Of a stretch of DNA of 64,000 nucleotides, positions 3,091-44,670 are shown one piece after another (the stretch's first letter is position 1; each line of letters begins with the position of its first letter). Source of the stretch: Heteronotia binoei. Taxonomy: Eukaryota. A program made the position numbers and the translations under genes. A model generated the notes under the pieces. The model did not search any database. It had not been told where the DNA came from and saw only the letters and a list, made by a program, of their open reading frames with translations. The stretch spans positions 47,678,001 through 47,742,000 of the forward strand of contig NC_083230.1 in NCBI RefSeq assembly GCF_032191835.1, written 5' to 3'.

Positions 3091-4590
3091 GTTTGTGTTG
3101 TAAGCCAGTTTAGCGCAAGGAATAGTGCTACGTGCAGTAAAGGAAACTATTTTATACTTCACCTTCGTAGATACATTCAACTTTGTATTTACAATTGGCA
3201 ATCACCTCACAAGAGTCCTTCTGTTAAATATAGGGGGTGAGGAGAGGAATATGTTGCATTTTTTTGTTGTGAGTCCTCACTGGTAAACACAAAGTAGGTA
3301 ATTAATTTGTGATCACACTCCGGAGTGAGGTTTGGGATGGTGCAGGAAGAGAGGTTTCAGAAGCAGAGATGGTAAAAAGGATACTTCTCTCCCACCTTTT
3401 ACATTTTTTCTCGCCTTCTGCTAATGGTAAAGAACTAAGATTGGGCACTGGTTGCTATAATTTATGTTGTTTTGTCAGAAGATAGTGAGTGGGTTGGGGG
3501 GGGGGGGACCCGGGGCTGAGAGTAAGTGATAGCCAGTGAAGCCAAAGGGTACCAAATAGTATCAAAACCATGGAAATATTTGATAAATTGAGTGTTTTCA
3601 ATAATCAGTTCTTCTGTATCATATTTGCTGATTTCAAAGAGAAAAATAAAATTAAAGATATATGGTACATTCCCAAGTTTCCAGTTAGCAAACAGCTTCA
3701 TATGAAAGCCCCCTTGCCCAGCTGTTTAAGATCTAGCATAATTTTACAGATCCTTCCTCATTTCTAAAAATGCAACTAGCAGGATAGCTGTTCCCCCTAC
3801 AGCAAGGGTACCCATTTCCATCATATTGACTTAGGATATCATTGCGGGTGGAGAGTGTTGTAACAGTCCCACATAGTGTTAATTCCAGGGGCTTTTACAG
3901 TCTGAAGAGGCCTTAATTGTGATTCTAGCTCTAACCGATCACAGAGTAATATCCTGCCATTTCTTCAGTCCCCTCTCGGTGTGCGTAGTTCTTCCACTGC
4001 CATTTTATTTTCCGTACAATCCTGTGAAGTAGGTTAAATTGAAAGAAGGTGAAGGGTTGGAAATCACACCATGAGTTTTATAGCTGAATGGGGATGTGAA
4101 CATAGGACTCTTACTGGTCCTGGTGTGAGATGCTAGCCATTATACCACAGTGAATCTCAATAAACAAAATATTGTGATGTTTAGAATCCAGGGGTTTGCA
4201 GCTGTTTGACCTGAACGAATTGAGTTCAGCATGACTTTGTGTTTTGCTATTTTTAATTGAGATCCAGTTCTGGAAGTATACTTCAAAATGTTTTTTAAAT
4301 ATTGAAGCTTAAGAGGTTTATTAGGGTGGTTCATGATATTTCTGAAGAGTATTCTAGGAGACTTTAGAGGTATGCTCTTCAGTGCTGTGGTCCTTTGTTT
4401 TGCTAATTTGGTGATGTTGTTGAATGCATTACAGAACCTCAGTATCTTTGTGTACACTGGATGTTTTTTCACTGATGTCCTGTAAGAAAGCATGGGGATA
4501 TTTTTGGAGGTACATGCTTGTTTGGGGGTTTTCTTTTTGCACTTATGAATGCTTTAAATGAATCTTCAGTATGCTTCTGTTTTCATTCAG

Positions 4591-21425: not shown

Positions 21426-22685
21426 CTGGATTCATAGAAAAAGGTTTTGCTTATCATGGCAGTGAAGTTCACAGGAATGGTTTATCACACACAGTATTAA
21501 CAATATAATTGCCAAAGGGTGCAGGAGGAGAGCAAGCGATGGATGACCATGAATCGTGGACCATAGAGAACAATTGCTGGCCCACAAGGAAGTGAATTAA
21601 CTAGCAGAAGACGTTACAAGAGGCATGTCAATGAACTTCAAGCAAACTTTATGCTGAAACCACCCATGCACTGAAAAGCCCTGGTAGGAACATTCAGGGC
21701 TAAAAAACTGCCCACAGGTCAGGGGGAGAAACAGGTCAAGCCTTTAACTGTGGCAGACACAAAATATAAAAGGAGTAAAAACTTTCCTGCAAAGAGAAAT
21801 GCATCCCTATTGGCTCTCTAAAAACAAAAATGCAACTATGATCCTCTCAGCCAATCCCTTTATCACAGCCACCTTGCTGCTTCCCAACTGCTATGATTTA
21901 TGCAGTGACAAGGGCATGTTAATTCAATAGGGATAAATCCCACAACATCTCCAGGCTCTATAACTATTAATGCAAACTGATCTCTTGCATGCATCAGTGC
22001 TCTCAAGATCCCATAATGCAGATCAGTAAATGACCAGTGCTTGAGCTAGGATTAGAAGGGGAAAGTATATTTTCCCGGCTGTATTAATCCATATTTAAGA
22101 AATTCAATCAGAGCTATGTCTGTATTATATGCTAGCAAATTTAATCTTAGATGCATTAATCTGATGCTTTCTCACCATCATTCAGCACAGGACCAGCTGA
22201 CCACTAGGCACATTTAGGCAATAGCTAAGGGCATCAGAGGTGAAGGGTGGCTTCCAGTCCTGTTTCCCACCCCCACCTGCCTGCCCACCCATGTCTGAAT
22301 CCCTACAGTTCATGCAGGGGGGTTGAGCAAAGTAGGCACTGCCTCCCCAGTGCTCCTTGCTGCATCTTGCCATGGTGCCAGTGGGCCAGGAAGGCAGGCT
22401 GTGACTTCTCACTGTGCCTCAGTGTCAGGGAAGGGTGAAATGGTTGCTTAGGGCACCCAAAGTCCTTGGACCAGCTCTGACGCAGCAGCTGAGAAGTTGA
22501 ACTCTCAAAACTGAAGAGGTGAAACTATGTCAAAAGGATTAGATTTACATTTTGCCATGGTATAAATATCCCCTGAGACATTTGAGACATTTAATAGTTA
22601 TAATCCCATTATAAGGAGGCTCAGGCTGTGGTCAGAATGTGTGTGTATGTGGTGGGGTGTGGGATAAGTTCTCCGGTGGTCTGGA

Positions 22686-22796
22686 CAGTGGGTCGGTCCG
22701 ACTACTGGGTATAGGCTCCTCCTCCACTCCACAGGGTCGGGTCTTCTTGACTGATCCGGAGGGGGGGAGTGGCCTATACCTCCCAGCTCCCGCCAG
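22686..22796 (+). repeat. DIRS left inverted terminal repeat core
   Basis: 111 bp; by eye the exact reverse complement of 28059-28169. Confidence 0.95.
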
Positions 22797-23380
22797 TTTT
22801 GTTCCCGGCCCTGCAAGAGCAGGACGGGCTCTTCTGTGGCGCGCTCGAAGCAGCGCAGAAGATTCGGAGGAAGACTCGTGTTTTTTCTGAACAGCTTGGT
22901 GCTTGGGAGCGTAGGGGTTTGCCCCGACAAACCCAGCAGCCGAACGAGCGTGCAAGGCTACTCACGAGTAGTCCTTGCGGTGGCGCGGCGGGCGTCTGAA
23001 GCGGTCGGCTTTTTCAGAAGCCCCTGGAGCTCCGTTTCCACCCAGGCGCGAGTGGAACGGAGCGGAGGAAAAAGGCTGCGGCTTGTTCCTTTCAACGCGG
23101 TAAGTCGTCCCGCGGCGGGGAGGACCTGCGCGGGCGATTTGGAGCTGGGGGGAAAAGTTAGCCTTTCCCCTGCAGGCTGACGGCAGTCGGGAGGAGCCCT
23201 AACACTGGGCTACATAGCATTGCCGGTTTCTGAATAGGAGACCTTAGTGTTGAGAGCAAGGTACTGCTGGATCAGCCTGAAGGGCTAGTTTGAATTGCTG
23301 CCGTCCATTTTGAAGTTTTTCCCGCCCTTTTGTCAGTGCCTCTTTCTCATTTCCCTTATAAGGATCTGGTGTGCAGCAAA

Positions 23381-24754
23381 ATGGCGGCTAGTTCTCAGAG
23401 CAACTCTCCAAGCGAATTTGATTTACCTCCTTTATCAGGAGCCCTGACACAACAGCAAGAGACTCAGAATCCTGATCTCATGGGAGAGGACGCTAAGACA
23501 AACCTTTTGCAATGGCTCAAAAGGGAAATGTTGAAGGAGCTGGGGCAGGATTTCAATCAGATCGTCCCTTCCACTCTGTTGAAACAAAGAAGACAAGAGG
23601 GCAGAAAAAGGCCCAGAGACCCCAGCCCTGGTGACACTCTGGGACAGCCTAAGGGCAAGGTTCATTTAGGGCTGGATTCCCCTCTTATGAGTTCAGCTGA
23701 AGACTCGGAGGACTCTGAACAACAGTCAGATAGGGAGGAAGGCGAGCTCTCTGATGAGGAGGAGGAAAAGTCGGACACTGTGCAGTCTAGACTTTTTCCC
23801 ATTGAATACTATTCTAAGTTGCTCCCCAAGGTCTTGAGGACCCTTAACTTTGTGGCCTCACCTAAGGAGTGTGAGGAGCTGGATCCTGACCTTCCCACGG
23901 GATCAGGGGAAATGATGCCTAAGTTGGGCAGTGTTCAGACGGGGGTACCCTTACCTGCAGCCTTTTTTGCTCTGGTTAAGGCGGAGTGGGAAAGGCCGGC
24001 TAAACCTAAGAACAACCAACAGGTCATCCCAAAACTCTACTCCCTCATTCCACAGGCCACTAAGAGGCTAAAATTGCCTACGGTGGACGATCCTGTGACT
24101 AGCCTGATTTCAAATTCGGTCCTCCCTATGGATGCGGACGGTTTGCCCAGAGATCCATGTGACAGAAGGATTGAACAGGCTTTACGAAAAGAGTTTGAAG
24201 CTACATCATGGGCCATTAAAGCAGCCACAACATCTTCTCTGTTTGCTAGAGCTATGTGCACATGGTCCAATAACTTAGCATCTGCGGATAGTGGAGCTCC
24301 TAAGGAGTTCAAGGATGAACTAAAGAAGATTGCTCTGTCTGCTGCCTTTGTGGCAGATAGTTCTTTGGACACCATGCAACTGGCTGCCAGAGCCATGGCC
24401 TGTGGTGTGGCAGCTAGACGCAACATTTGGTTGCGTAATTGGGAAGTAGACACTGCAGCCCAGGCCAGGGTCGCAGCAGTACCATTCAAGGGATCCTTGT
24501 TGTTCGGGGAGGGCCTGGACAGGTACCTCATCGAAAACAAGGATAAAAAGAAGGTCCTACCCTCCAAGGGGAAGGATACAAAGCAGAGGAAACCTTTTCT
24601 TTCCTTTCGGGACTCCAAAAAGCCATCCAGAGCAGGTCCCTTTCGTTCTTTCAAAGGAAAGTGGCAACACAAAGGGCGTGATTCCAAGCCCTTTTACTCC
24701 GGGAAATCAGATCAGAACCCCAAACCCTCTTCAAAAAAAGGGGGACCTCAATGA
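23381..24754 (+). CDS. DIRS ORF1, gag-like (probable LAP2-alpha-like domain)
   Basis: First ATG of the element, in strong Kozak context (AAAATGG). Uninterrupted; acidic N-terminus and basic C-terminus. VPFKGxLLFG segment typical of vertebrate DIRS ORF1. Confidence 0.88.
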   Translation: MAASSQSNSPSEFDLPPLSGALTQQQETQNPDLMGEDAKTNLLQWLKREMLKELGQDFNQIVPSTLLKQRRQEGRKRPRDPSPGDTLGQPKGKVHLGLDSPLMSSAEDSEDSEQQSDREEGELSDEEEEKSDTVQSRLFPIEYYSKLLPKVLRTLNFVASPKECEELDPDLPTGSGEMMPKLGSVQTGVPLPAAFFALVKAEWERPAKPKNNQQVIPKLYSLIPQATKRLKLPTVDDPVTSLISNSVLPMDADGLPRDPCDRRIEQALRKEFEATSWAIKAATTSSLFARAMCTWSNNLASADSGAPKEFKDELKKIALSAAFVADSSLDTMQLAARAMACGVAARRNIWLRNWEVDTAAQARVAAVPFKGSLLFGEGLDRYLIENKDKKKVLPSKGKDTKQRKPFLSFRDSKKPSRAGPFRSFKGKWQHKGRDSKPFYSGKSDQNPKPSSKKGGPQ

Positions 24755-26656
24755 CTATGCCCCGCACCAGAGGGCAAGGAATATAGGGGGTCGCCTTTCC
24801 CTATTTATAGACGCCTGGAGGCAATCGATTCAGGACAAATGGGTCCTAGAGATAGTGGAACAGGGCTACGCCATAGAGTTCTACTCCCCCCCTCCCAACC
24901 ACTTTCGTTGGGTTCCACCAAAAAGAGACTTGATTGCGCACAAAGCAATGTTGGCAGCCATCCAACACCTGTTGGAAATAGGAGCAGTGGAACCCGTTCC
25001 AGTATCCCAGCAGGGTTCAGGTGTTTACTCCATCATCTTTTTAGTGCCAAAAAAGAACGGGGAGTTCAGAACCATCCTGGACCTGAAATGGCTCAACAAG
25101 TTTGTTCCAGCAAAGCATTTCAAAATGGAGACTCTTCGGTCAGTTTTGCTAGCCATTCAGCCTCAGGATTTTCTGGCTTCCTTGGATCTATCAGAGGCCT
25201 ACTTACATGTTCCCATTCGGGAATCACACAGGAAGTTCCTACGTTTCTCCTATGCAGGGAAACATCTCCAGTACCGGGCATTACCGTTCGGCCTGAAGTC
25301 CTCGCCTCGGGTCTTCACCAAAGTCCTGGTGACCCTGGTGGCAGAACTGAGACTGCAGGGGGTGTCCCTCTTTCCTTATTTAGACGACATTCTGGTGAAA
25401 GGGGGGTCTTTCCAACAGTGCCAGAAGGGCATTCACCAGACAGTGACTGTGCTGCGCGACCATGGCTTTGTGGTAAATTTGGAGAAGAGCAATCTTCTTC
25501 CCTCTCAGAGGCTAGTGCATCTGGGAGTGGAAATAGACACGACCTTGGACAGAGTCTTTGTAACCTCGGAGAGACGGGAGAAGTTTCGTCTCCTGTTACA
25601 GGGGATTTTTCGACAACGCAGGGTGTCGGTGAGGTTGTTAGCGCAACTGTTGGGAATGATGGTATCCTTTCAGGACCTAATCCCGTGGGCCAGGTTTCAC
25701 ACTCTTCCCCTGCAGTTTTTCCTTCGCCCATTCCAGGAAGTCATAGGGAACAAGATTCACAAATTGGTGTCGCTTCCACTAGAAGTGAAATCACAGATGC
25801 AGTGGTGGTTGGATCCAGGTCTTTTCCTCCCAGGTCATCTGTTACGCGAGCCCCAGAGGGTGTGTGTCACCACAGATGCCAGTCTGTGGGGTTGGGGGGC
25901 TCACTCTCAGGATCAAATGATCCAGGGCCAATGGGAACCCCACGAGGCCAAAAGGAGCATCATTTTTTTAGAACTCAGAGCGATTCGGTTAGGCCTAAAG
26001 GGCCTACAGACGATCTTGGGGGGTCGCCATGTCTTGATGAAAACAGACAATTCAACAGCCAAGGCATACATAAATCGACAGGGGGGAACCAAAGTGAAAT
26101 CTCTCCATGCCGAGGCGAAGATTCTCTTCGAGTGGGCGGAGACCAACCTGCTCTCAATCAAGGCGGTGCATGTTCCTGGAAAGGACAATGTAGTAGCGGA
26201 CTGGCTCAGCAGACATTGGCTGGACCAAACGGAATGGATGCTACACAAAGACACTTTCAGTCTGTTAGTGGACAGGTACGGTCCGGTGACGGTGGACTTG
26301 TTTGCCACGGCAGAAAATCGTCAGGTGGACAGGTTTTTCGCCAAAAACAGAGACGTGAGAGCAGTAGGCACGGACGCGCTCAGCGCAGAATGGCCAGTGG
26401 GACTTTTGTATGCTTTCCCGCCCCTCCCTCTGTTACCCAGGGTGATTCAGAGGGTGGTGGGGTAGAAATGATACTAGTGGCTCCCTTCTGGCCGAGACGG
26501 TCATGGTTCCAGGAGCTCCTGAGGTTGTCCGTTCAGCCCCCTTGGCGCCTACCGAGGAGGGTCGACCTGTTAACTCAGGGCGACATGTCTCACCCTCAAC
26601 CAGACCTGTTACAGTTGACAGCCTGGAGGTTGAGCGGTCGCAGCTCGAGAAATTAG
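24678..26656 (+). CDS. DIRS ORF2: reverse transcriptase, RNase H and DAM-like methyltransferase, frameshifted near 26457
   Basis: LPFGL..SPRVF, YLDD (25377-25388), TDASLWGWG, VDLFA and YAFPP. The tail ILVAPFWP...LTAWRL continues in another frame to 26656. Confidence 0.92.
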
Positions 26657-27669
26657 GCTATGGTAGGAGTGTGGTGGACACTATGCTTGCTTCACGCAAG
26701 GGCTCCACGAATAGAGTGTATAACAACACCTGGAAGGTTTTTTCCTCATGGTCAACCCAGAGAGGGTGGGATCCGATGTTGATTAAGGTTAGAGATATTC
26801 TCAGTTTTCTACAGGAAGGGGCAGATAAGGGACTTTCCACCAGCACGTTACGAAGGCAGGTGGCGGCCATATCTTCCATACGGGGGGTGCGGGGGCGGAA
26901 GGCCCTGTCAGCGCATCCGCACGTTAAAAGGTTTTTGAGGGGTACTGCTTTGCTTAAACCCCCGCAGGTGCACAGGTTCCCTTCATGGAGGTTGAACGTA
27001 GTCTTGAAGGCATTGTGTGGGCGTCCCTTTGAGCCTTTGGCCTCCTGTGGGATCAAGGAACTAACACTTAAAACTCTTTTTTTAGTAGGTATCTCCACGG
27101 CACGGAGAGTGTCTGAATTGAGAGCCCTATCGGTTGATAAGGAGCTTTGTGTGTTCCATAACGAAAAGGTGGTGCTCAGGCCAGATCCATCTTTTATCCC
27201 TAAAGTTAACTCCTTGTTTCATAGGTCGCAGGAGTTGGTTCTTCCAAACTTCTGTCCTAATCCTCAGTCGGCAAAGGAAAGGGAGTTGCACTGCCTAGAT
27301 GTTAGGAGGGCTCTTAGTTTTTATATAGAGCGCACCAAAGACTGGAGAAAGTCTGAATCCATGTTTGTTTCTTTCAGTAAAAAATCACAGGGGCGACAGG
27401 TCTCTACCTCTTCCCTTAGTAGGTGGCTACGGGAATGCATTGTTTTAGCCTACAGGGCCCAGGGTCAAATCCCTCCAGAAGGGATCACAGCTCATTCCCT
27501 GAGAGGCGCTGCAACATCGGCTGTGTATCGGTCCTTCCCATCACTGGAAGCCGTGTGTAAGGCAGCAACTTGGAAATCGGTGCATACCTTTACCAGACAC
27601 TACAAGGTAGATAAGTGGGCTTCAGCGGATGCAGCCTTTGGAAGGCGTGTGCTGCAGCATGCACTCTAA
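24839..27669 (+). CDS. DIRS ORF3: long overlapping N-terminal part plus tyrosine recombinase, frameshifted near 26457
   Basis: Recombinase motifs STARRVSEL, HSLRG and FTRHY in 26503-27669. The ATG-started open frame from 24839 joins it if the same indel is repaired. Confidence 0.85.
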
Positions 27670-27713
27670 ATAGGGAAGCCGGTCCTGCCCGGGGATGTTT
27701 AGCTTTGTTACGT

Positions 27714-27816
27714 CCCAGTAGTCGGACCGACCCACTGTCCAGACCACCGGAGAACGGAAGATTGGTATCACTTACCGTGAAGCTTCCTTCTCGGTGGACT
27801 GGCAGTGGGTCGGTCC
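27714..27816 (+). repeat. DIRS internal complementary region (ICR)
   Basis: Reverse complement of the element's 5' start fused at GAAC to the reverse complement of its 3' end, i.e. the circle junction ...CTTCC-GTTC-TCCGG.... Confidence 0.95.
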
Positions 27817-27967
27817 GGCCCGCCCATTGAGGTTGAGCGGCTTCCTGGGTTTTGGAGTTGGATCCTGGAGCATTGCCTGTGTCTCTCCTGAACGATATTG
27901 CTGTTTTTTTCCTGTATGGGCTTGATTTCTGTTTTCAGTCCCCTAGTTTGGGGGCAGTCTGAAACGT

Positions 27968-27973
27968 AATAAA
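27968..27973 (+). terminator. DIRS polyadenylation signal
   Basis: AATAAA between the ICR and the right ITR, followed by T/GT-rich sequence. Confidence 0.55.
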
Positions 27974-28058
27974 TATTTCTCTTTATTCACCTGTCTCTGT
28001 ATGTGAATGGGGAGGTTTTGGAACTTTTTTCTTCCTAGGGGATGTGGCTTGGATACAC

Positions 28059-28220
28059 CTGGCGGGAGCTGGGAGGTATAGGCCACTCCCCCCCTCCGGA
28101 TCAGTCAAGAAGACCCGACCCTGTGGAGTGGAGGAGGAGCCTATACCCAGTAGTCGGACCGACCCACTGCCAGTCCACCGAGAAGGAAGCTTCACGGTAA
28201 GTGATACCAATCTTCCGTTC
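28059..28220 (+). repeat. DIRS right ITR plus right-end extension
   Basis: 28059-28169 is the inverse of the left ITR. 28170-28220 is a unique extension complementary to the ICR. Confidence 0.95.
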
Positions 28221-28421
28221 TATATGTGAGAATATCACGGCCAATATTAGAGCCAATTGTACATGTGCACATATCAGCTCAATATTGGCTTTAAGTGCAG
28301 CCTGAATGCTGCCATAATGGACAGTCACTGAACAACTAGACACGGGTGCATTAGGAGCCAAGTCCGGTCTTGCTAAGTCCTCTCAAAGCCTTTCCTTCGT
28401 CTCTCCCTCCCCAGATCTCAC

Positions 28422-28819
28422 TGTCGGAGCGGGAGTAGCAGAGTGAGGGAGATGACTTGCCCGACACAGGGCTTCAGGAAAGAAAATCAGGCAGACACGT
28501 GCAACTAGTGCCAAAAGGTGTATTAACATATATACACAACAAGTGCTCTCTTGTGCAGTCTATACAATATCACCTCCACGGACAAAGTGCTTCGCCTAAC
28601 CACCATCTCACAGGGAGAGACCTGTGTGATGCACACACAGATCATATATAGTCCAAGCAGCCAATCCTGGCCGTGCTGACTCAGCAGATTGCATCACTTG
28701 GCTTCTGCCGGCTCAAGCCGGTCTGCTGATCAGGTCACTGTGACCTAGCCTGGCAGCTAGATCACCAGCTGTCATACTGTAGCTGTCGGACTGGGTTTAT
28801 GTAGATTCTTGCTCCAACA
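28422..28819 (-). repeat. Copia 3' LTR (398 bp)
   Basis: Preceded on the - strand by the purine tract AGGAGGTG. Confidence 0.96.
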
Positions 28820-29007
28820 CACCTCCTAATCTATTTAAACCCAGTGCACCAAAACACTTTACACAGTTTACATACATGTCCACCTGCAACATTACAGTTC
28901 ATATTTACGTAGCTCGGAACCCTTTCCGGAATTCGTTCAGGAACTCATCATGATTGTAAAACACATCATCGTGTTCCTGTTCAGCCAGCTCTTTCAGACG
29001 CTTGGCT

Positions 29008-30987
29008 TCAGCCTCCTTTCCTTCTATGTTTCAGAGGAATATTCACCCAGGCTTGGGTTCCAAATACCCTCAGAAAGCTCAAATCTGGGCAGTGGTTATA
29101 TAGCCGCTTATAAGGCAAATCATTTACAGGCTTACACCAAACCCTATTATGTACGTATGCCGAGCAATGCATCGCTTCCGCCCAATAACGAATTGGCAGC
29201 TTTGCATCCTCGAGCATGCTGTGCATTAATGTTTGTAACACGGCGCCTGTTCGCTCGGATAGCCCATGTTCTTGGGGCGTTGCCGGGTTCGTCAGACGGT
29301 GGGCGATGCCCTTGTTCTCCAGCCAACGTTTCATCTGGTTAGATAAGAATTCCCCCCCTCTGTCGGTTTGTACAGCTAGGAGATTAACCCCTAATTGTCT
29401 CTCCACTGCTTTGACCCACTTGGTGAATGTCTTATACACCTCAGACTTATGCACCATGGTGAAAACCCACGCGTACCTCGTGTGGTCGTCGGTGGCCACC
29501 AAGCAGTATCTCCTCCCCGACAGACTCTTTGGCAATGGGCCAATAACGTCTAAATGGACTAGTTCCAGGGCTCGTGTGCTTTCCCTTGAGCTTTCTTTAG
29601 CAACAGCACACGCCTTGCTTTTGGTCTTCTTGCAGACCTGGCAATCCAAGTAACATTTGCAAGGATTTACTTTCAAACTAGGCACAAGCTCCAGGGTTTT
29701 CTTTAACGCCCTAAATCCGCAGTGCCCAAGTCTCCTATGGAGCAAATGTATACAATTATTGTGCACAGGCTCATTCGACACCTGAGCCACCTGGGCACAA
29801 TCACTCTGGACCACATACAGTTTACCTTCCCTCTTTCCTGTCACAAGCAACTTTCCCCCACCTCCCAGGATTTTGCAGCAGGTTTTCTCAAATCTCACCT
29901 GGTATCCCTGGTCAAACAGTGTGCTAACACTCAACAGGTTAGACTGCAGTGAGGGTACATACAACACATTTTGCAACATACATTTCAGTGCAGGAAATTC
30001 CACATTGCCTGAGCAAACGGAATTGGCAGTGGTCCCATCAGCCAATCTCACATACTTATGCTCAGGACTGTCAATGTTTTTCAACAACTCCTTCTCGCAG
30101 CAGAGATGGCTCGTTGCCCCGGAGTCTAAAATCCAAGCAGACCCTGTGCTCTCTACTGCAGACGTGACCAGCCGGGTTGCTTCCTCACACGGGCTGGCGG
30201 TCCTCCGCTCTCGCCGCACACGCCCCCGCCTCTTCTCCCTCTCAGGGCAAGCTCGGAGCAGGTGCTGCGACGACCCGCATCCATAGCAGCGACGGACTGC
30301 AAACGCAGTCGGCTCCACTTCCTCCACCTTCGGACGCCTGCCAGCAGCAAAAGCTGGCTCATTCTTGGCTGTCTTCCCGGACACACCGATAACAGCACGC
30401 TGCCCGGCCGACACCCCCGGACAGCTCACGGCCGCAATTCTCTCTTGGAAGTCAAGCAGGTGGGCACAGACGTATTCCATGGTCAGGGTCGCTACGTCCA
30501 CCGTCTCCAGAGAAGTTATCAGGGGAGTGTACTCAGGTGGCAACGACGACAGCAAAATGTACACTCTGTCGTCTGGAGCTACAGTCTTGCCTCTTGCCTC
30601 CAGCTCAACGAAACAGTCCGTTAGCCGTTTGATGTGATCTTTCACACACCCTCCAGCCGGCATAACGGTGCGGAACATCCTCCTTGTCAAGGCCATGAGG
30701 GAACCAGCAGTGGTGCTAACATGCACCGCACTCAACGCGTCCCAGGCAGCCTTGGGAGTGTCCTTCCCTCGCACATAAACCAGCTGGTCATCTCCTATAG
30801 ACAGCACTATGTTGGCCAGTGCCTTATCCGATAACACAGTCTCGGCAGGAGATAAGTCAGCAGGGGGGTTACTCACGAACAGCCATTGCCCTTCACGCTT
30901 GAGGTAGTGTTGCATTCTCAGGCTCCACACCGCGTAGTTGGCTGAGGTGAGCTTCTCAACGGCTACTCCAAGCTGTTGCTGAGCCAT
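29008..30987 (-). CDS. Copia Gag-protease-integrase polyprotein, 659 aa, truncated after the integrase core
   Basis: CCHC knuckle CYGCGSSQHLLRAC, protease WILDSGATSH, zinc motif HRRLGH..CQVC, and DDE core (HLDVIGP, TDRGGEF, GLSER). Confidence 0.95.
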   Translation of the reverse strand: MAQQQLGVAVEKLTSANYAVWSLRMQHYLKREGQWLFVSNPPADLSPAETVLSDKALANIVLSIGDDQLVYVRGKDTPKAAWDALSAVHVSTTAGSLMALTRRMFRTVMPAGGCVKDHIKRLTDCFVELEARGKTVAPDDRVYILLSSLPPEYTPLITSLETVDVATLTMEYVCAHLLDFQERIAAVSCPGVSAGQRAVIGVSGKTAKNEPAFAAGRRPKVEEVEPTAFAVRRCYGCGSSQHLLRACPEREKRRGRVRRERRTASPCEEATRLVTSAVESTGSAWILDSGATSHLCCEKELLKNIDSPEHKYVRLADGTTANSVCSGNVEFPALKCMLQNVLYVPSLQSNLLSVSTLFDQGYQVRFEKTCCKILGGGGKLLVTGKREGKLYVVQSDCAQVAQVSNEPVHNNCIHLLHRRLGHCGFRALKKTLELVPSLKVNPCKCYLDCQVCKKTKSKACAVAKESSRESTRALELVHLDVIGPLPKSLSGRRYCLVATDDHTRYAWVFTMVHKSEVYKTFTKWVKAVERQLGVNLLAVQTDRGGEFLSNQMKRWLENKGIAHRLTNPATPQEHGLSERTGAVLQTLMHSMLEDAKLPIRYWAEAMHCSAYVHNRVWCKPVNDLPYKRLYNHCPDLSFLRVFGTQAWVNIPLKHRRKGG

Positions 30988-31133
30988 CGTGCCGACTCCT
31001 CCTCACGGCCGGCTGCCGACGTCCCTCTGGCTCTCAAACAGAGAACGGTGGTGCTTCTGTGTCCTTCACCGGCGTTCCTCGCCTCCGGCTCTTTCCAACC
31101 TCACAGTCAGCTCAACTCTCAACTCTCTCCTCC

Positions 31134-31164
31134 GCGCAGCGGAAGCGTGCTGGGCCCATAACCC
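31134..31164 (-). other. Primer-binding site complementary to initiator tRNA-Met nt 10-40
   Basis: The + strand reads GCGCAGCGGAAGCGTGCTGGGCCCATAACCC, identical to recalled vertebrate tRNAiMet nt 10-40. It abuts the 5' LTR. Confidence 0.92.
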
Positions 31165-31562
31165 TGTCGGAGCGGGAGTAGCAGAGTGAGGGAGATGACT
31201 TGCCCGACACAGGGCTTCAGGAAAGAAAATCAGGCAGACACGTGCAACTAGTGCCAAAAGGTGTATTAACATATATACACAACAAGTGCTCTCTTGTGCA
31301 GTCTATACAATATCACCTCCACGGACAAAGTGCTTCGCCTAACCACCATCTCACAGGGAGAGACCTGTGTGATGCACACACAGATCATATATAGTCCAAG
31401 CAGCCAATCCTGGCCGTGCTGACTCAGCAGATTGCATCACTTGGCTTCTGCCGGCTCAAGCCGGTCTGCTGATCAGGTCACTGTGACCTAGCCTGGCAGC
31501 TAGATCACCAGCTGTCATACTGTAGCTGTCGGACTGGGTTTATGTAGATTCTTGCTCCAACA
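31165..31562 (-). repeat. Copia 5' LTR (398 bp)
   Basis: No difference from 28422-28819 found by eye. Confidence 0.96.
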
Positions 31563-34331
31563 CTCACATCTTTTTTCTAAATACTTCTCAATTAAAGAAG
31601 AAACAAATCAGTGTCTCAAATCATGTTTACACATCTTCGAAGCCATGCAGATCACTGTCCAGTTGCTCAATGTGAACTGATATGCATGTGTTAAATGACA
31701 ACCTTGGTTTGGATCAGCATCTCTGTACTACCAACAGAGACAAACCTTTCAAACTTTTGTTTAAGCATATCATGAATTCAGGAATTTAAAGGGATCAAAA
31801 TGTTGTATTTGCCATGGTGGCAATGGAGATAATGTTCAGGCCATGTGTCTGGTTACACTGTGTAGGGGGTTCCTTCAATGAGGCTGCCAGCACTTCCATT
31901 GTCTCTGCCAGTGATGTTCTAAGCAGCATTACAGCTTTCTAAGAAGAAGACGACGACTGCAGATTTATAACACGCCCTTCTTGCTGAATCAGAGACTCAG
32001 AGTGACTTACAATCTCCTATATTAATGAGGGTGAACCTTTTAGAGACTGAGTGCCCAAACCGCAACCCAAAACTCACTTATGTATCGCAAAGTGGCAACA
32101 CGGCAATTTAACCTGAATATTGAGGTTTTAGTTTAGAAAAAAACAATTCATAGTGAAATCAACAAACAAAGAACATTTGGTCTGGATAGCATTTGCTTAG
32201 GCAACCATCAAAATAGTAACATGTCAGAATGGGAGAATGATGGTGAGAGTGTCATAAGGCAATAAATGGAGGCTGTATTGCTCTGTTGCTTGCAGGTCTG
32301 GGTTAAACTGAGAACATGCCTTTCCCAGAGGTGTTCCTGTCCACCTAATTTACTTTTGAACATGTAACATCAGGCCCATAGCTACAAGGGGGCCTGTGGG
32401 GGCACAGCCCCCCAGCTATTGGATGAGGCCCCCTGACTTGGGGCCCCCAAACAGCCCCCGGGGCCTCTGCTGGATCCTGGAGCGTAGGGCAAGGGGCAGA
32501 AGCAGTCCCCAGCCTCCCCCTCCAGTTAAAAGAGCTGCGGGCCGATCAGCTGACCCTTTAACCCTGCATAGGATTCAACTGCTCCATAGCTACTGGTGCT
32601 CCTGGCTTGGCTGGTGATGAGGAGTGGGGGTGCACTAGGACCCTGTGGAGCAGACCCTGCCGGCTGCCTGTTGTCAGCCGGCTGGGACTCTCTCAAGGCT
32701 AGTAGCATTTCAACATCTAAAAGCTTCCGTGCCATGCATACACACACATCCTGGTAAGTAAATGTTCCCATCTGACTGCAAACTTCCCCCTTCTGCTGCA
32801 TATCTGAAGCTCTTCATGTTCTTTGTAATTCACAAGGTAAAACTTGCTCCCTCCCCCACACACATAGGGAAAGAGCATTTCCTCTTTTAAGCCCTCCCCC
32901 CCTTCCTTCCTTGGTCTCTCTAGCAAGCCATTTATTTAGCTCCAGCTCCACAAGGCTGGTTCCTACCAAAAGAATGACTCAATGTATGTGTGTTCACTTT
33001 AACTTGTGAACAGGACTTGTGCATGTGCATGTATGCTGGGGGGGGGGGGGGGGAGAAGGCTGGCAATATGCTTTCAATACAGTTATCCTTTATTTGGGTA
33101 GCAGAATGTGATATATGGGCTTTAATTCATAGAGTTAATAACTCTGGCTGGTAAATTTTTGGAGGATCCTGAGGAGGGCAGGGAGCTCAGTGGCATGTAA
33201 AGTCCATCCCCCCCCCCCCCCCCGCAAGCCATTCTGTACAGAGGAAATTATCTCTAGTCCAGAGAACAGTTATAATTCTGGGTGATCTCCAGGCCCCACC
33301 AGGAGTTTGGTAGCCCAATATCTTGGGAGTAAACCCACTGAATAAGAGTTCTGCTTTCCATTGCTTCAGGTGACCATCCTGTAGTTTGCTTTAATTTTCA
33401 CACACACACACTCGCCCTCCCAACTTTGTTATTCCAAGGAGGTCTCCCATCCAAATACTTGCCAGAGCAATTTCAAGTTTTTGAAAATTGGTTATCAGTG
33501 TCGGGGGGGGGGGCAGTAGGGAGTTTGAATGTTCTGGGAGCAGAAACAGATTTGTGTGGGTAGCAGTGTTGGTCTGAAGTAATAAAACAAAATTTAAGTC
33601 CGATGGCCCCTTTAAGGCCAACAAAGTTTAATCCTGGCTGTGTGGGGCACCAGCCAGTGTGATGGTAGGTCAGGTGGCCATGAGAGTGGCTATGGGTTGG
33701 GGCCATTGAGTGCCCCCCCCAAAAAAAATCAAAGGTCCCCTGACCTTCCAAGTTACACGGGGCTGTGTAACTTGTGAACAGCAATCTTATAAACATCAAT
33801 CTAGTTTGCCGTTAGGAAAAAAGAATACATTAAAATATAGTGTGTTTAGTAGGAGCTGGTGGTTAGGGTGTCCAAATCAGATCTGGGAGGTCCTGATTCA
33901 TATGCCCACTCTGCCCTGAGAGCTTGTAGGAAACCTTAGACCAGTAATATACTCTGAGTTAACCCACTTTATAGGTTCGTTGTGAGGATAAAAGAGAATG
34001 GGAGAGTGTGTCAAACCACTTCAATGTCCTTTTGGGGGAGAAAGGCAGGAGATACATGATGTTAGTTAATAAATTAAGTTGATGAAAGGAGTCCACTGAT
34101 TTATATGGCTAAATCTGAGTCCAGCAGCACCTTAGAGAACAAGCTCCTTTTATCTAATCGAGGGAGCTCTAATGCTGGAAAGCTTGTGCCCCCGCCCCCA
34201 AATCTTGTTGGTCTCCAAGGTGCTCCTGGGCTCCAATCTAGTTATTCTACTATGGACCAGTACTATGGCTACCCTTGGAAACTTCAGGGATAGTCTGAAT
34301 TGTATTAACTAGAAAGTCTGATGTGAGAAAG

Positions 34332-37097: not shown

Positions 37098-37315
37098 GGG
37101 GAGGGACAGTGGCTCAGTGGTAGAGCATCTGCTTAGTAAACAGAAGGTCCCAGGTTCAATCCCCGGCATCTTCAGCTAAAAAGGGTCCAGGCAAATAGGC
37201 ATGAAAAAACCTCAACTTGAGACCCTGGAGAGCCGCTGCCAGTCTGAGTAGACAATACTGACTTTGATGGACCGAGGGTCTGATTCAGTATAAGGCAACT
37301 TCATATGTTCATATA
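37098..37315 (+). mobile_element. tRNA-derived SINE with CR1-type tail
   Basis: A box TGGCTCAGTGG, B box GGTTCAATCC, tail GATTCAGTATAAGGCAACTTCATATGTTC. A second copy lies at 44449. Confidence 0.85.
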
Positions 37316-44448: not shown

Positions 44449-44670
44449 GGGGAGGGACGGTGGCTCAGTGGTAGAGCATCTGCTTGGGAAGCAGAAGGTC
44501 CCAGGTTCAATCCCTGGCATCTCCAAAAAAGGGTCCAGGCAAATAGGTGTGAAAAACCTCAGCTTGAGACTCTGGAGAGCCGCTGCCAGTCTGAGAAGAC
44601 AATACTGACTTTGATGGACTAAGGGTCTGATTCAGTATAAGGCAGCTTCATATGTTCTTCATATGTTCAT
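44449..44670 (+). mobile_element. tRNA-derived SINE with CR1-type tail
   Basis: Close paralogue of 37098-37315. Confidence 0.85.

What the first reader, a model, noticed from the sequence alone, without database searches (positions are those of the whole stretch)
31134..31164. Exceptionally long 31-nt primer-binding site: a fossil copy of an initiator-tRNA 5' half ending exactly at m1G9
Seen: the sequence abutting the 5' LTR is a perfect copy of tRNAiMet nt 10-40 (sequential numbering, D-arm through anticodon stem), and the match stops abruptly at nt 9. Known: Drosophila copia primes from a cleaved 39-nt 5' fragment of tRNAiMet using only about 15 nt (GGTTATGGGCCCAG, also present here). Human tRNAiMet carries m1G9, which blocks reverse transcription. 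Inference: the primer is a 40-nt 5' tRNA half, and plus-strand synthesis copies it until m1G9, regenerating a PBS twice the usual length. This would point to a vertebrate tRNA-half-primed retrotransposition route, and would make the element a perfect target for 5' tRNA halves. I cannot say whether this is already documented for reptile copia families.
Basis: partly seen in the sequence, partly recalled or inferred. Interest (0 to 1): 0.78.

Follow-up and report, generated by a model that had tools for sequence, protein, structure and literature searches.

The report
Double-length half-tRNA primer site in copia
A very young, reverse-transcriptase-less copia jumping gene has a primer-binding site that pairs with 31 bases of initiator tRNA instead of the usual 14. 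The site stops exactly before a methylated base (m1G9), and many unrelated copia elements from other eukaryotes stop at the same position.

Summary
Window 31134-31164 (+) equals nt 10-40 of vertebrate initiator tRNA-Met, 31/31, checked against the sequence printed in PMC8216282. It mismatches at nt 9 and nt 41. It abuts the 5' LTR of a minus-strand Ty1/copia element at 28422-31562, which has identical 398-nt LTRs, a 5-bp target duplication and a Gag-protease-integrase ORF but no RT or RNase H.

This is a primer-binding site of the known half-tRNA (hemivirus/copia) kind, at twice the usual length. Of nine protein relatives fetched, seven carry the classical 14-nt site. A metagenome scan found 31 other clusters with extended sites; the seven tested encode copia proteins. 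Fourteen to sixteen reach tRNA position 10, and none passes nt 8. So the boundary is real and is not specific to this genome or to vertebrates.

m1G9 is the best explanation of the boundary: it is documented in human tRNAiMet and blocks both RT and Watson-Crick pairing. It conflicts with Ty1/Ty3, where the tRNA copy is not inherited.

This scan already reported the same feature on other copies in this genome (s1-335860, s1-322589). Verdict: a new variant of a known kind, of moderate interest.

The parts
31165..31562 (-). 5' LTR of the copia element (398 nt). In element sense it runs TGTTGG...CCGACA.
   Evidence: 100% identical to 28422-28819; TG...CA termini read.
31134..31164 (-). Primer-binding site, 31 nt, the perfect complement of tRNAiMet nt 10-40. 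Its first base pairs with C40 and its last with G10.
   Evidence: tRNA sequence from PMC8216282.
31178..31188 (-). U5 motif, CACTCTGCTAC in element sense, 15 nt upstream of the LTR end. It is the complement of tRNAiMet nt 1-9 and also a copy of the tRNA's 3' acceptor strand plus A73 and C74. It may be an auxiliary (PAS-like) pairing site; its function is open.
   Evidence: Read. The same 12-mer CACTCTGCTACC occurs in U5 of the unrelated element L020, and a weaker copy in L059. In the leader fold it pairs with the purine run 3' of the PBS.
30988..31133 (-). Untranslated leader between the PBS and the gag start codon.
   Evidence: Its fold is not more stable than shuffles (z +0.81).
29008..30987 (-). 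Open 659-aa ORF: copia Gag, zinc knuckle, protease, integrase core, and the start of the SH3-like domain. RT and RNase H are absent.
   Evidence: Pfam hits Retrotran_gag_2, Pol_BBD, gag_pre-integrs, rve and a partial SH3_retrovirus; no RVT_2.
28820..28832 (-). Polypurine tract (AGATTAGGAGGTG in element sense), directly upstream of the 3' LTR.
   Evidence: Sequence read.
28422..28819 (-). 3' LTR (398 nt).
28417..28421 (.). Target-site duplication CTCAC, left copy.
31563..31567 (.). Target-site duplication CTCAC, right copy.

Best explanation
The 31-mer is the minus-strand primer-binding site of a very recently inserted, internally deleted (RT/RNase H-less) Ty1/copia retrotransposon. As in Drosophila copia and other hemivirus-type elements, reverse transcription would be primed by a 5' fragment of initiator tRNA-Met cut in the 3' strand of the anticodon stem, not by the tRNA's CCA end. 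Here the fragment's 3'-OH would lie at C40. In this lineage the element RNA pairs with the whole D arm and anticodon arm (nt 10-40), not only the anticodon arm (nt 26-39). The pairing ends at nt 10 because the next base, G9, is N1-methylated in eukaryotic tRNAiMet and can neither be copied by RT nor form a Watson-Crick pair. The favoured route to this length is retrovirus-like. Plus-strand strong-stop DNA copies the primer still attached to the minus strand until it meets the first blocking base. That copy is at least sometimes inherited, so the site is extended and refreshed up to nt 10. What is shown: the element's anatomy, the 31/31 match and its sharp ends, the recurrence of the nt-10 endpoint in many unrelated elements, and (from the literature) m1G9 on human tRNAiMet and its RT-stopping effect. 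What is inferred: a cleaved primer ending at C40, methylation of G9 in this host, and inheritance of the tRNA copy. Lacking RT, this copy must have been mobilised in trans by an autonomous relative.
For: Anatomy: identical 398-nt LTRs, TG...CA ends, 5-bp duplication, PPT, and a gag-PR-IN ORF. The PBS is a 31/31 match unique in the window, with 0 of 100 shuffles matching, to the tRNAiMet sequence in PMC8216282. Half-tRNA priming is established for copia, defines Hemivirus, and occurs in the plant lineages Osser, Bryco and Gymco-II. Endpoint survey: a metagenome scan for LTR-end plus tRNAiMet nt 39/40 to 21 gave 78 sites in 31 clusters. Eight clusters end exactly at nt 10. Two more (L039, L040) reach it with one G-to-A transition, and four have T for C at the nt-10 position. 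Two read on to nt 8, about as chance predicts (2 of 10 have C at the nt-9 position, against 25% expected). None goes further, although per-base continuation from nt 21 to nt 10 is about 0.9. Three D-loop variants (C16, U16, GGTTAGC) are copied faithfully, as expected if each host's own tRNA is matched. The downstream ORFs tested, in seven of these loci, are copia gag/PR/IN/RVT_2, only 23-30% identical to the window's ORF, and they are scattered over the tree. m1G9 is present on human tRNAiMet, is made by TRMT10A and stops MuLV RT. No m2,2G or m3C lies between the anticodon and G9. m1G9 is also widespread in zebrafish tRNAs, including a Met-CAT cluster.
Against: [quoted passage not shown] The plus-strand product that runs into the tRNA is a dead end. 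Seven of nine protein relatives fetched without regard to PBS type stop at 14 nt (nt 26-39), although tRNAiMet has no known hard stop at G26. So copying up to nt 10 is not automatic. Twelve of the 31 clusters end between nt 15 and 21. Neither G9 methylation nor the tRNAiMet sequence could be checked in this host. No small-RNA or cDNA data were available. The PBS start (nt 40, or nt 39 with an LTR ending CAG) is ambiguous by one base in this single copy.
Confidence: 0.6

Rival explanations
1. Selection only. The site is inherited strictly from the parental RNA, as in Ty1/Ty3, and was lengthened by ordinary mutation and selection for a more stable primer-template duplex. It stops at nt 10 because m1G9 cannot pair, or because nt 10 is the first base of the D stem. 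No tRNA-templated copying is involved.
For: Ty1 and Ty3 do not inherit the tRNA copy. A 14-nt class persists in the nearest relatives. Intermediate lengths of 19-25 nt exist. Four clusters carry T instead of C opposite G10, a G-U wobble that pairing would tolerate.
Against: Gaining 16-17 extra perfectly complementary bases by point mutation, repeatedly in lineages that share only 23-30% protein identity, and always up to the same base, is hard to credit when each added pair beyond about 18 brings little extra stability. The exact copying of three host-type D-loop variants looks templated.
Confidence: 0.25
2. The boundary is set by tRNA architecture, not by a modification. The primer is a nicked tRNA whose 5' acceptor strand (nt 1-7) stays paired with the 3' half, so only the D and anticodon arms are free to pair or to be copied.
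For: nt 10 is the first D-stem base. The 14-nt class also ends at an arm boundary (start of the anticodon stem). Nicked tRNAs are stable (Costa 2023, listed in PMC10275265). The U5 acceptor-strand mimic hints that the acceptor stem matters.
Against: This model leaves U8 and G9 free, so endpoints at nt 8 would be expected. Only 2 of the 16 clusters reaching nt 10 (counting the one-transition and T-for-C cases) read on to nt 8, which is what chance gives.
Confidence: 0.1
3. It is not a functional primer site but a chance match, or a fragment of a tRNA gene, pseudogene or SINE lying beside the LTR.
For: tRNA-derived repeats do occur in this window (37103-37174, 44453-44525).
Against: The match is 31/31 and begins at the very base after the LTR, in the antisense orientation required of a PBS. 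It contains the copia core. The same arrangement recurs in 78 metagenome sites next to LTR ends, and copia ORFs lie downstream in the seven loci tested. The LTRs are identical and a target duplication is present, so the leader belongs to the transposed unit.
Confidence: 0.01

Closest known systems
Drosophila copia primer-binding site (Hemivirus; Kikuchi et al. 1986)
   Same: Ty1/copia element. The PBS lies directly after the LTR's CA and contains the identical core GGTTATGGGCCCAG, complementary to the anticodon arm of tRNAiMet. The primer must be a cleaved 5' tRNA fragment.
   Different: Copia pairs with 14 nt (nt 26-39) and its primer ends at nt 39. Here the pairing runs on through the whole D arm to nt 10 (31 nt) and starts one base further out, at nt 40. 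All 78 metagenome sites and 8 relatives start at nt 39.
Half-molecule tRNA-Met priming in other copia lineages (Osser, Bryco, Gymco-II in plants; Ty5 in yeast)
   Same: An internal region of tRNAiMet is used instead of the CCA end. The trait is characteristic of a lineage (PMC6317226; Ty5 from my own knowledge).
   Different: Published descriptions that I could search give short sites. No paper in the held library prints a site running into the D arm.
Retroviral 18-nt PBS, set by the plus-strand strong-stop at m1A58 of the primer tRNA
   Same: The site's length equals the distance from the primer's 3' end to the first Watson-Crick-blocking methylated base. Retroviruses inherit the tRNA copy (PMC7472051; the m1A58 rule is my own knowledge).
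   Different: A different tRNA end (5' fragment, not 3' end), a different base (m1G9, not m1A58) and a different length (30/31, not 18). Inheritance of the tRNA copy is unproven here and absent in Ty1/Ty3.
Extended primer contacts outside the PBS (HIV-1 PAS in U5; Ty1 boxes; Ty3 bipartite PBS)
   Same: The U5 motif complementary to tRNA nt 1-9 has the same crossed topology as a PAS: an upstream U5 element pairing with a more 5' part of the primer. Ty1/Ty3 bipartite sites are noted in PMC5371799.
   Different: There is no experimental support. No linker exists on the tRNA side and only 15 nt on the element side, so pairing at the same time as the 31-bp duplex is sterically tight. The motif is also a sense copy of the tRNA's 3' acceptor strand.

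Membership tests
Ty1/copia (Pseudoviridae) LTR retrotransposon | Two LTRs with TG...CA ends, flanked by a 5-bp target-site duplication | tested here: met
   398-nt LTRs, 100% identical; TGTTGG...CCGACA; CTCAC on both sides
Ty1/copia (Pseudoviridae) LTR retrotransposon | Copia-type Gag, then protease, then integrase upstream of RT | tested here: met
   Retrotran_gag_2, Pol_BBD, gag_pre-integrs and rve, in that order, in one 659-aa ORF
Ty1/copia (Pseudoviridae) LTR retrotransposon | Copia-type reverse transcriptase (RVT_2) and RNase H | tested here: not met
   No RVT_2 hit. The ORF stops within the SH3-like domain and only 188 nt remain before the PPT. It is therefore a deletion derivative of a copia element, not an autonomous member.
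Ty1/copia (Pseudoviridae) LTR retrotransposon | PBS complementary to tRNAiMet next to the 5' LTR, and a PPT next to the 3' LTR | tested here: met
Hemivirus-type (half-tRNA-primed) copia elements | PBS complementary to an internal part of the tRNA (anticodon arm), not to the 3' CCA end | tested here: met
   The match covers nt 10-40. No TGGTAGCAGAG-type site follows the LTR.
Hemivirus-type (half-tRNA-primed) copia elements | [quoted passage not shown] | tested here: not met
   31 nt here, against 14 nt in L001, L002, L079-L081, L083 and L084. This is the point of difference.
Hemivirus-type (half-tRNA-primed) copia elements | A cleaved 5' tRNAiMet fragment is present in particles and joined to minus-strand strong-stop DNA | not testable with these tools
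   Needs particle RNA/cDNA analysis
Retrovirus-like PBS regeneration from the primer | The site ends one base before the first Watson-Crick-blocking modified base of the primer | tested here: inconclusive
   The positions coincide with m1G9 of human tRNAiMet, and no m2,2G or m3C intervenes. Modification of the host's tRNA was not testable.
Retrovirus-like PBS regeneration from the primer | The tRNA-templated copy is inherited by progeny elements | not testable with these tools
   The opposite was found for Ty1/Ty3. The common nt-10 endpoint across lineages is only indirect support.

The most novel reading that the evidence does not exclude
Half-tRNA-primed copia elements come in two main site-length classes: 14 nt, and 30/31 nt ending at nt 10. 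These classes report two modes of plus-strand transfer within one virus family. One is Ty1-like, where the tRNA copy is discarded. The other is retrovirus-like, where the primer is copied up to m1G9 and the copy is inherited. Genomic primer sites would then be a fossil record of a tRNA modification (m1G9 on tRNAiMet) across eukaryotes. In some lineages a U5 acceptor-strand mimic (CACTCTGCTAC) would capture the remaining nt 1-9, so that the whole 40-nt tRNA half is held by the element RNA.
Probability: 0.3. Interest if true: 0.7.

Novelty: new variant of a known kind. Interest (0 to 1): 0.5.

Why it matters
Primer choice and primer-site inheritance are core steps of LTR-retroelement replication, yet in Pseudoviridae they have been dissected only in yeast Ty1. 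A class of copia elements whose site runs exactly to the first methylated, RT-blocking base of a 5' tRNA fragment raises two questions. Do some pseudovirids inherit the tRNA copy as retroviruses do? Does a tRNA modification enzyme (TRMT10A/Trm10) set a sequence feature of genomic parasites? Both can be tested directly. Extension of the half-tRNA site through the D arm to nt 10 also appears undocumented in the literature I could search, although it is widespread in environmental eukaryotes. A 31-nt site would also be an unusually long target for competing tRNA-derived small RNAs, by analogy with 3'-tRF control of mammalian ERVs. That part is speculation.

Tried and rejected
(1) A viral-contig scan with the LTR-end plus extended-PBS pattern gave 0 hits.
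(2) The word search for protein relatives gave nothing above 33% identity, so no close vertebrate relatives could be compared.
(3) The search of earlier findings by sequence was blank.
(4) The leader RNA fold is not more stable than shuffles (z +0.81), so no special structure is claimed.
(5) Within-family variability of the PBS against its flanks in four multi-copy metagenome families showed an invariant PBS but an almost invariant leader too. It has no power to separate templating from selection.
(6) I considered that an m2,2G26 stop explains the 14-nt class and rejected it as a general rule. Human tRNAiMet lacks m2,2G, and its G10-U25 pair argues against dimethylation (my own knowledge).
(7) ARAGORN finds no tRNA in the odd L003-type repeat or in L020/L035.
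(8) Literature searches for a published long half-tRNA site or a link between m1G9 and retrotransposon primer sites found nothing relevant. Older subscription papers on Ty5, Osser and copia itself are not in the library, and PMC1170264 is not held.
(9) The chance-match or tRNA-pseudogene reading was rejected (see rivals).

Housekeeping: no fetched contig looked human and none was set aside for that reason. In scripts, the 40-nt tRNA 5' half was assembled from two stretches of the window itself (31180-31188 and 31134-31164) rather than typed.

Full report
**1. What is at the coordinates**

Window 31134-31164 (+) is a 31-mer that occurs once in the window. Nothing within three mismatches turned up in 100 dinucleotide-preserving shuffles. 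The human initiator tRNA-Met sequence printed in PMC8216282 contains exactly this string at nt 10-40 (sequential numbering; position 17 is absent in this tRNA). The flanking bases break the match on both sides: window 31133 is C where tRNA nt 9 is G, and window 31165 is T where nt 41 is A. The classical copia core lies inside it. The stretch is in tRNA sense on the + strand, so it is a complement on the minus strand, as a primer-binding site (PBS) must be.

**2. The element it belongs to**

- **LTRs and ends.** Direct repeats at 28422-28819 and 31165-31562 are 100% identical. In element (minus-strand) sense they read TGTTGG...CCGACA. They are flanked by a 5-bp duplication, CTCAC, at 28417-28421 and 31563-31567.
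- **Other parts.** A short polypurine tract (28820-32) precedes the 3' LTR.
- **Coding capacity.** Between the LTRs lies one open 659-aa ORF (30987-29008, minus). It has copia Gag, a zinc knuckle, protease, integrase core and the first 28 residues of the SH3-like domain. It has no RVT_2 or RNase H.
- **Reading.** This is a 3141-bp, very young, internally deleted copia element that must have moved with RT supplied in trans. Earlier notes of this scan describe similar RT-less copies and an intact copia elsewhere in the same genome, which they call a gecko. I did not verify the species.
- **Border ambiguity.** The base at 31164 (tRNA nt 40) is by coincidence also matched beside the other LTR (28421, part of the duplication). 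The LTR/PBS border is therefore formally ambiguous by one base in this copy. Canonical TG...CA ends with a 5-bp duplication give nt 10-40.

**3. Is the length unusual?**

I fetched the DNA around nine protein relatives, chosen only by protein similarity (26-33% identity).

- Seven have ACA|GGTTATGGGCCCAG followed by unrelated sequence. That is the 14-nt copia site (nt 26-39).
- One has a degenerate version of the same site.
- One (a pseudoscorpion element) uses the 3'-end site TGGTAGCAGAG.

So 14 nt is the norm, and the window's 31 nt is about double.

**4. Is the endpoint meaningful?**

I scanned the metagenome contigs for an LTR end (ACA) followed by the complement of tRNAiMet from nt 39 or 40 down to nt 21. 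This returned 76 loci and 78 sites, which fall into 31 clusters by flanking sequence. The downstream ORFs I tested (seven loci) are copia gag/PR/IN/RVT_2. They are only 23-30% identical to the window's ORF.

Endpoints, conditioned on reaching nt 21:

| Last tRNA nt matched | Clusters |
|---|---|
| nt 8 | 2 |
| nt 10 | 8 |
| nt 11 | 5 |
| nt 12 | 4 |
| nt 15-21 | 12 |

- Two of the nt-12 cases (L039, L040) reach nt 10 with a single G-to-A change.
- Four of the five nt-11 cases have T for C opposite G10.
- So 14-16 clusters effectively reach nt 10.
- Of the ten that reach nt 10 exactly, two carry C at the nt-9 position (25% expected by chance). Both then carry A at the nt-8 position, and none matches further.
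- Per-base continuation between nt 21 and nt 10 is about 0.9, so the abrupt end is a real boundary. It is not the tRNA's 5' end.
- U8 and G9 are conserved in eukaryotic tRNAiMet (my own knowledge), so the test at nt 9/8 is valid across hosts.
- Three D-loop versions (C16 as in vertebrates, U16, and a GGTTAGC form) are copied faithfully in different clusters, as expected if each element matches its own host's tRNA.
- On a protein tree the long-site elements are scattered. The window's element sits, on a long branch with modest support, next to a 14-nt clade and near a long-site clade.
- All 78 sites start at nt 39. Only the window's element starts at nt 40.

**5. What sets the boundary**

Human tRNAiMet carries m1G9, made by TRMT10A. 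m1G9 abolishes G-C pairing and stops MuLV RT in primer extension. The same paper states that m3C and m2,2G are absent from this tRNA (PMC6212784). m1G9 is also widespread in zebrafish tRNAs, including a Met-CAT cluster (PMC11417395). So, reading from the primer's 3' end at nt 40 towards its 5' end, the first base that cannot be copied or paired is nt 9. That is exactly where the site stops.

**6. How the site came to be that long**

Retroviruses do this (PMC7472051).

For Ty1, which belongs to the same family as copia, and for Ty3, a marked primer tRNA is NOT inherited. The plus strand that runs into the tRNA is a dead-end product (Lauermann and Boeke 1994 and 1997, as summarised in PMC5371799 and PMC7472051). 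The persistence of 14-nt sites in most relatives also shows that extension is not automatic.

Against a selection-only origin, 16-17 extra perfectly complementary bases arose in several distantly related lineages, always up to the same base.

My reading is as follows:
- m1G9 sets the limit (about 0.6).
- Occasional or lineage-specific inheritance of the tRNA copy is the more likely route (about 0.4-0.5).
- Strict RNA inheritance with selection is the main rival (about 0.25).

An attractive but untested idea is that the two length classes mark two modes of plus-strand transfer.

**7. The U5 motif**

Fifteen bases upstream of the LTR end, the element RNA reads CACTCTGCTAC (window 31178-31188). 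This is the complement of tRNA nt 1-9 and also a copy of the tRNA's own 3' acceptor strand plus A73 and C74.

- I found the same 12-mer, CACTCTGCTACC, 22 nt from the LTR end of an unrelated metagenome element (L020), and a weaker version in L059. These were among 55 distinct upstream regions.
- Pairing with nt 1-9 at the same time as the 31-bp duplex would be a crossed, PAS-like arrangement with a very short linker, so it is sterically doubtful.
- In the minimum-energy fold, the motif instead pairs with the purine run just 3' of the PBS.
- Its function is open.

**8. Known or new**

Half-tRNA priming is textbook: copia 1986, the genus Hemivirus, and the plant lineages. I found no paper in the held library that prints a site running into the D arm, or that links m1G9 with retroelement primer sites (judged from the listed titles). 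Older subscription papers are not searchable, so prior description cannot be excluded.

The same feature was already noted and followed up by this scan on other copies in this genome (s1-335860, s1-322589, s1-338013).
- the cross-eukaryote endpoint survey;
- the contrast with the nearest relatives;
- the one-base shift of the start;
- the Ty1/Ty3 counter-evidence.

**9. Verdict**

This is a new variant of a known kind, of moderate interest.

Noticed in passing
window 31178-31188 (and L020 about 4235-4246): The U5 motif CACTCTGCTAC(C) is the complement of tRNAiMet nt 1-9 and also a sense copy of the tRNA's 3' acceptor end. It recurs in an unrelated metagenome copia element (L020) and weakly in L059.
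   Followed up: partly
window 29008-30987 (-) and 28820-29007: This copy is 3141 bp, with an open Gag-PR-IN ORF ending inside the SH3-like domain. Earlier notes describe RT-less copies of about 3.7 kb elsewhere in the genome, so more than one deletion form may circulate.
   Followed up: no
window 22668-28220 / ORFs 23330-27669 (+): Long overlapping ORFs lie just left of the copia insertion. The copia element landed about 200 bp to its right.
   Followed up: no
window 37103-37174 (+): Rfam scores this as tRNA at 42 bits, but ARAGORN does not call it. The sequence reads like the head of a tRNA-derived SINE.
   Followed up: no
window 44453-44525 (+): ARAGORN calls tRNA-Pro(GGG) and Rfam scores tRNA at 56.9 bits. 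Whether it is a gene or a SINE head was not examined.
   Followed up: no
L003, L007, L016, L017, L031, L050, L054, L074 and others: A repeat begins at ACA|GGTTATGGGCCCAGCACGCTT and continues with a G/T-rich stretch and a T-arm-like GGTTCGAGTCC plus a perfect 6-bp hairpin. It sits behind at least four unrelated upstream sequences. It may be a non-autonomous unit that starts at the PBS. ARAGORN finds no tRNA in it.
   Followed up: partly
L018, L048, L071 versus L002 (same WGS prefix WLWD01; L048 is WLWI01): One organism's assembly holds copia families with a 14-nt site (L002) and with a 19-nt site (L018, L071). Site length therefore varies among families within a host.
   Followed up: no
L051 5941-8901 (-), L004 family: The gag ORF is followed directly by an RVT_2 ORF, with no integrase hit between them in the pieces tested.
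   Followed up: no
L035 about 4205-4244 (-): Directly after its 29-nt half-tRNA site, this element reads TGTAGCAGAG. That is one mismatch from the classical 3'-end tRNAiMet site TGGTAGCAGAG, so two kinds of tRNAiMet site appear to lie in tandem.
   Followed up: no
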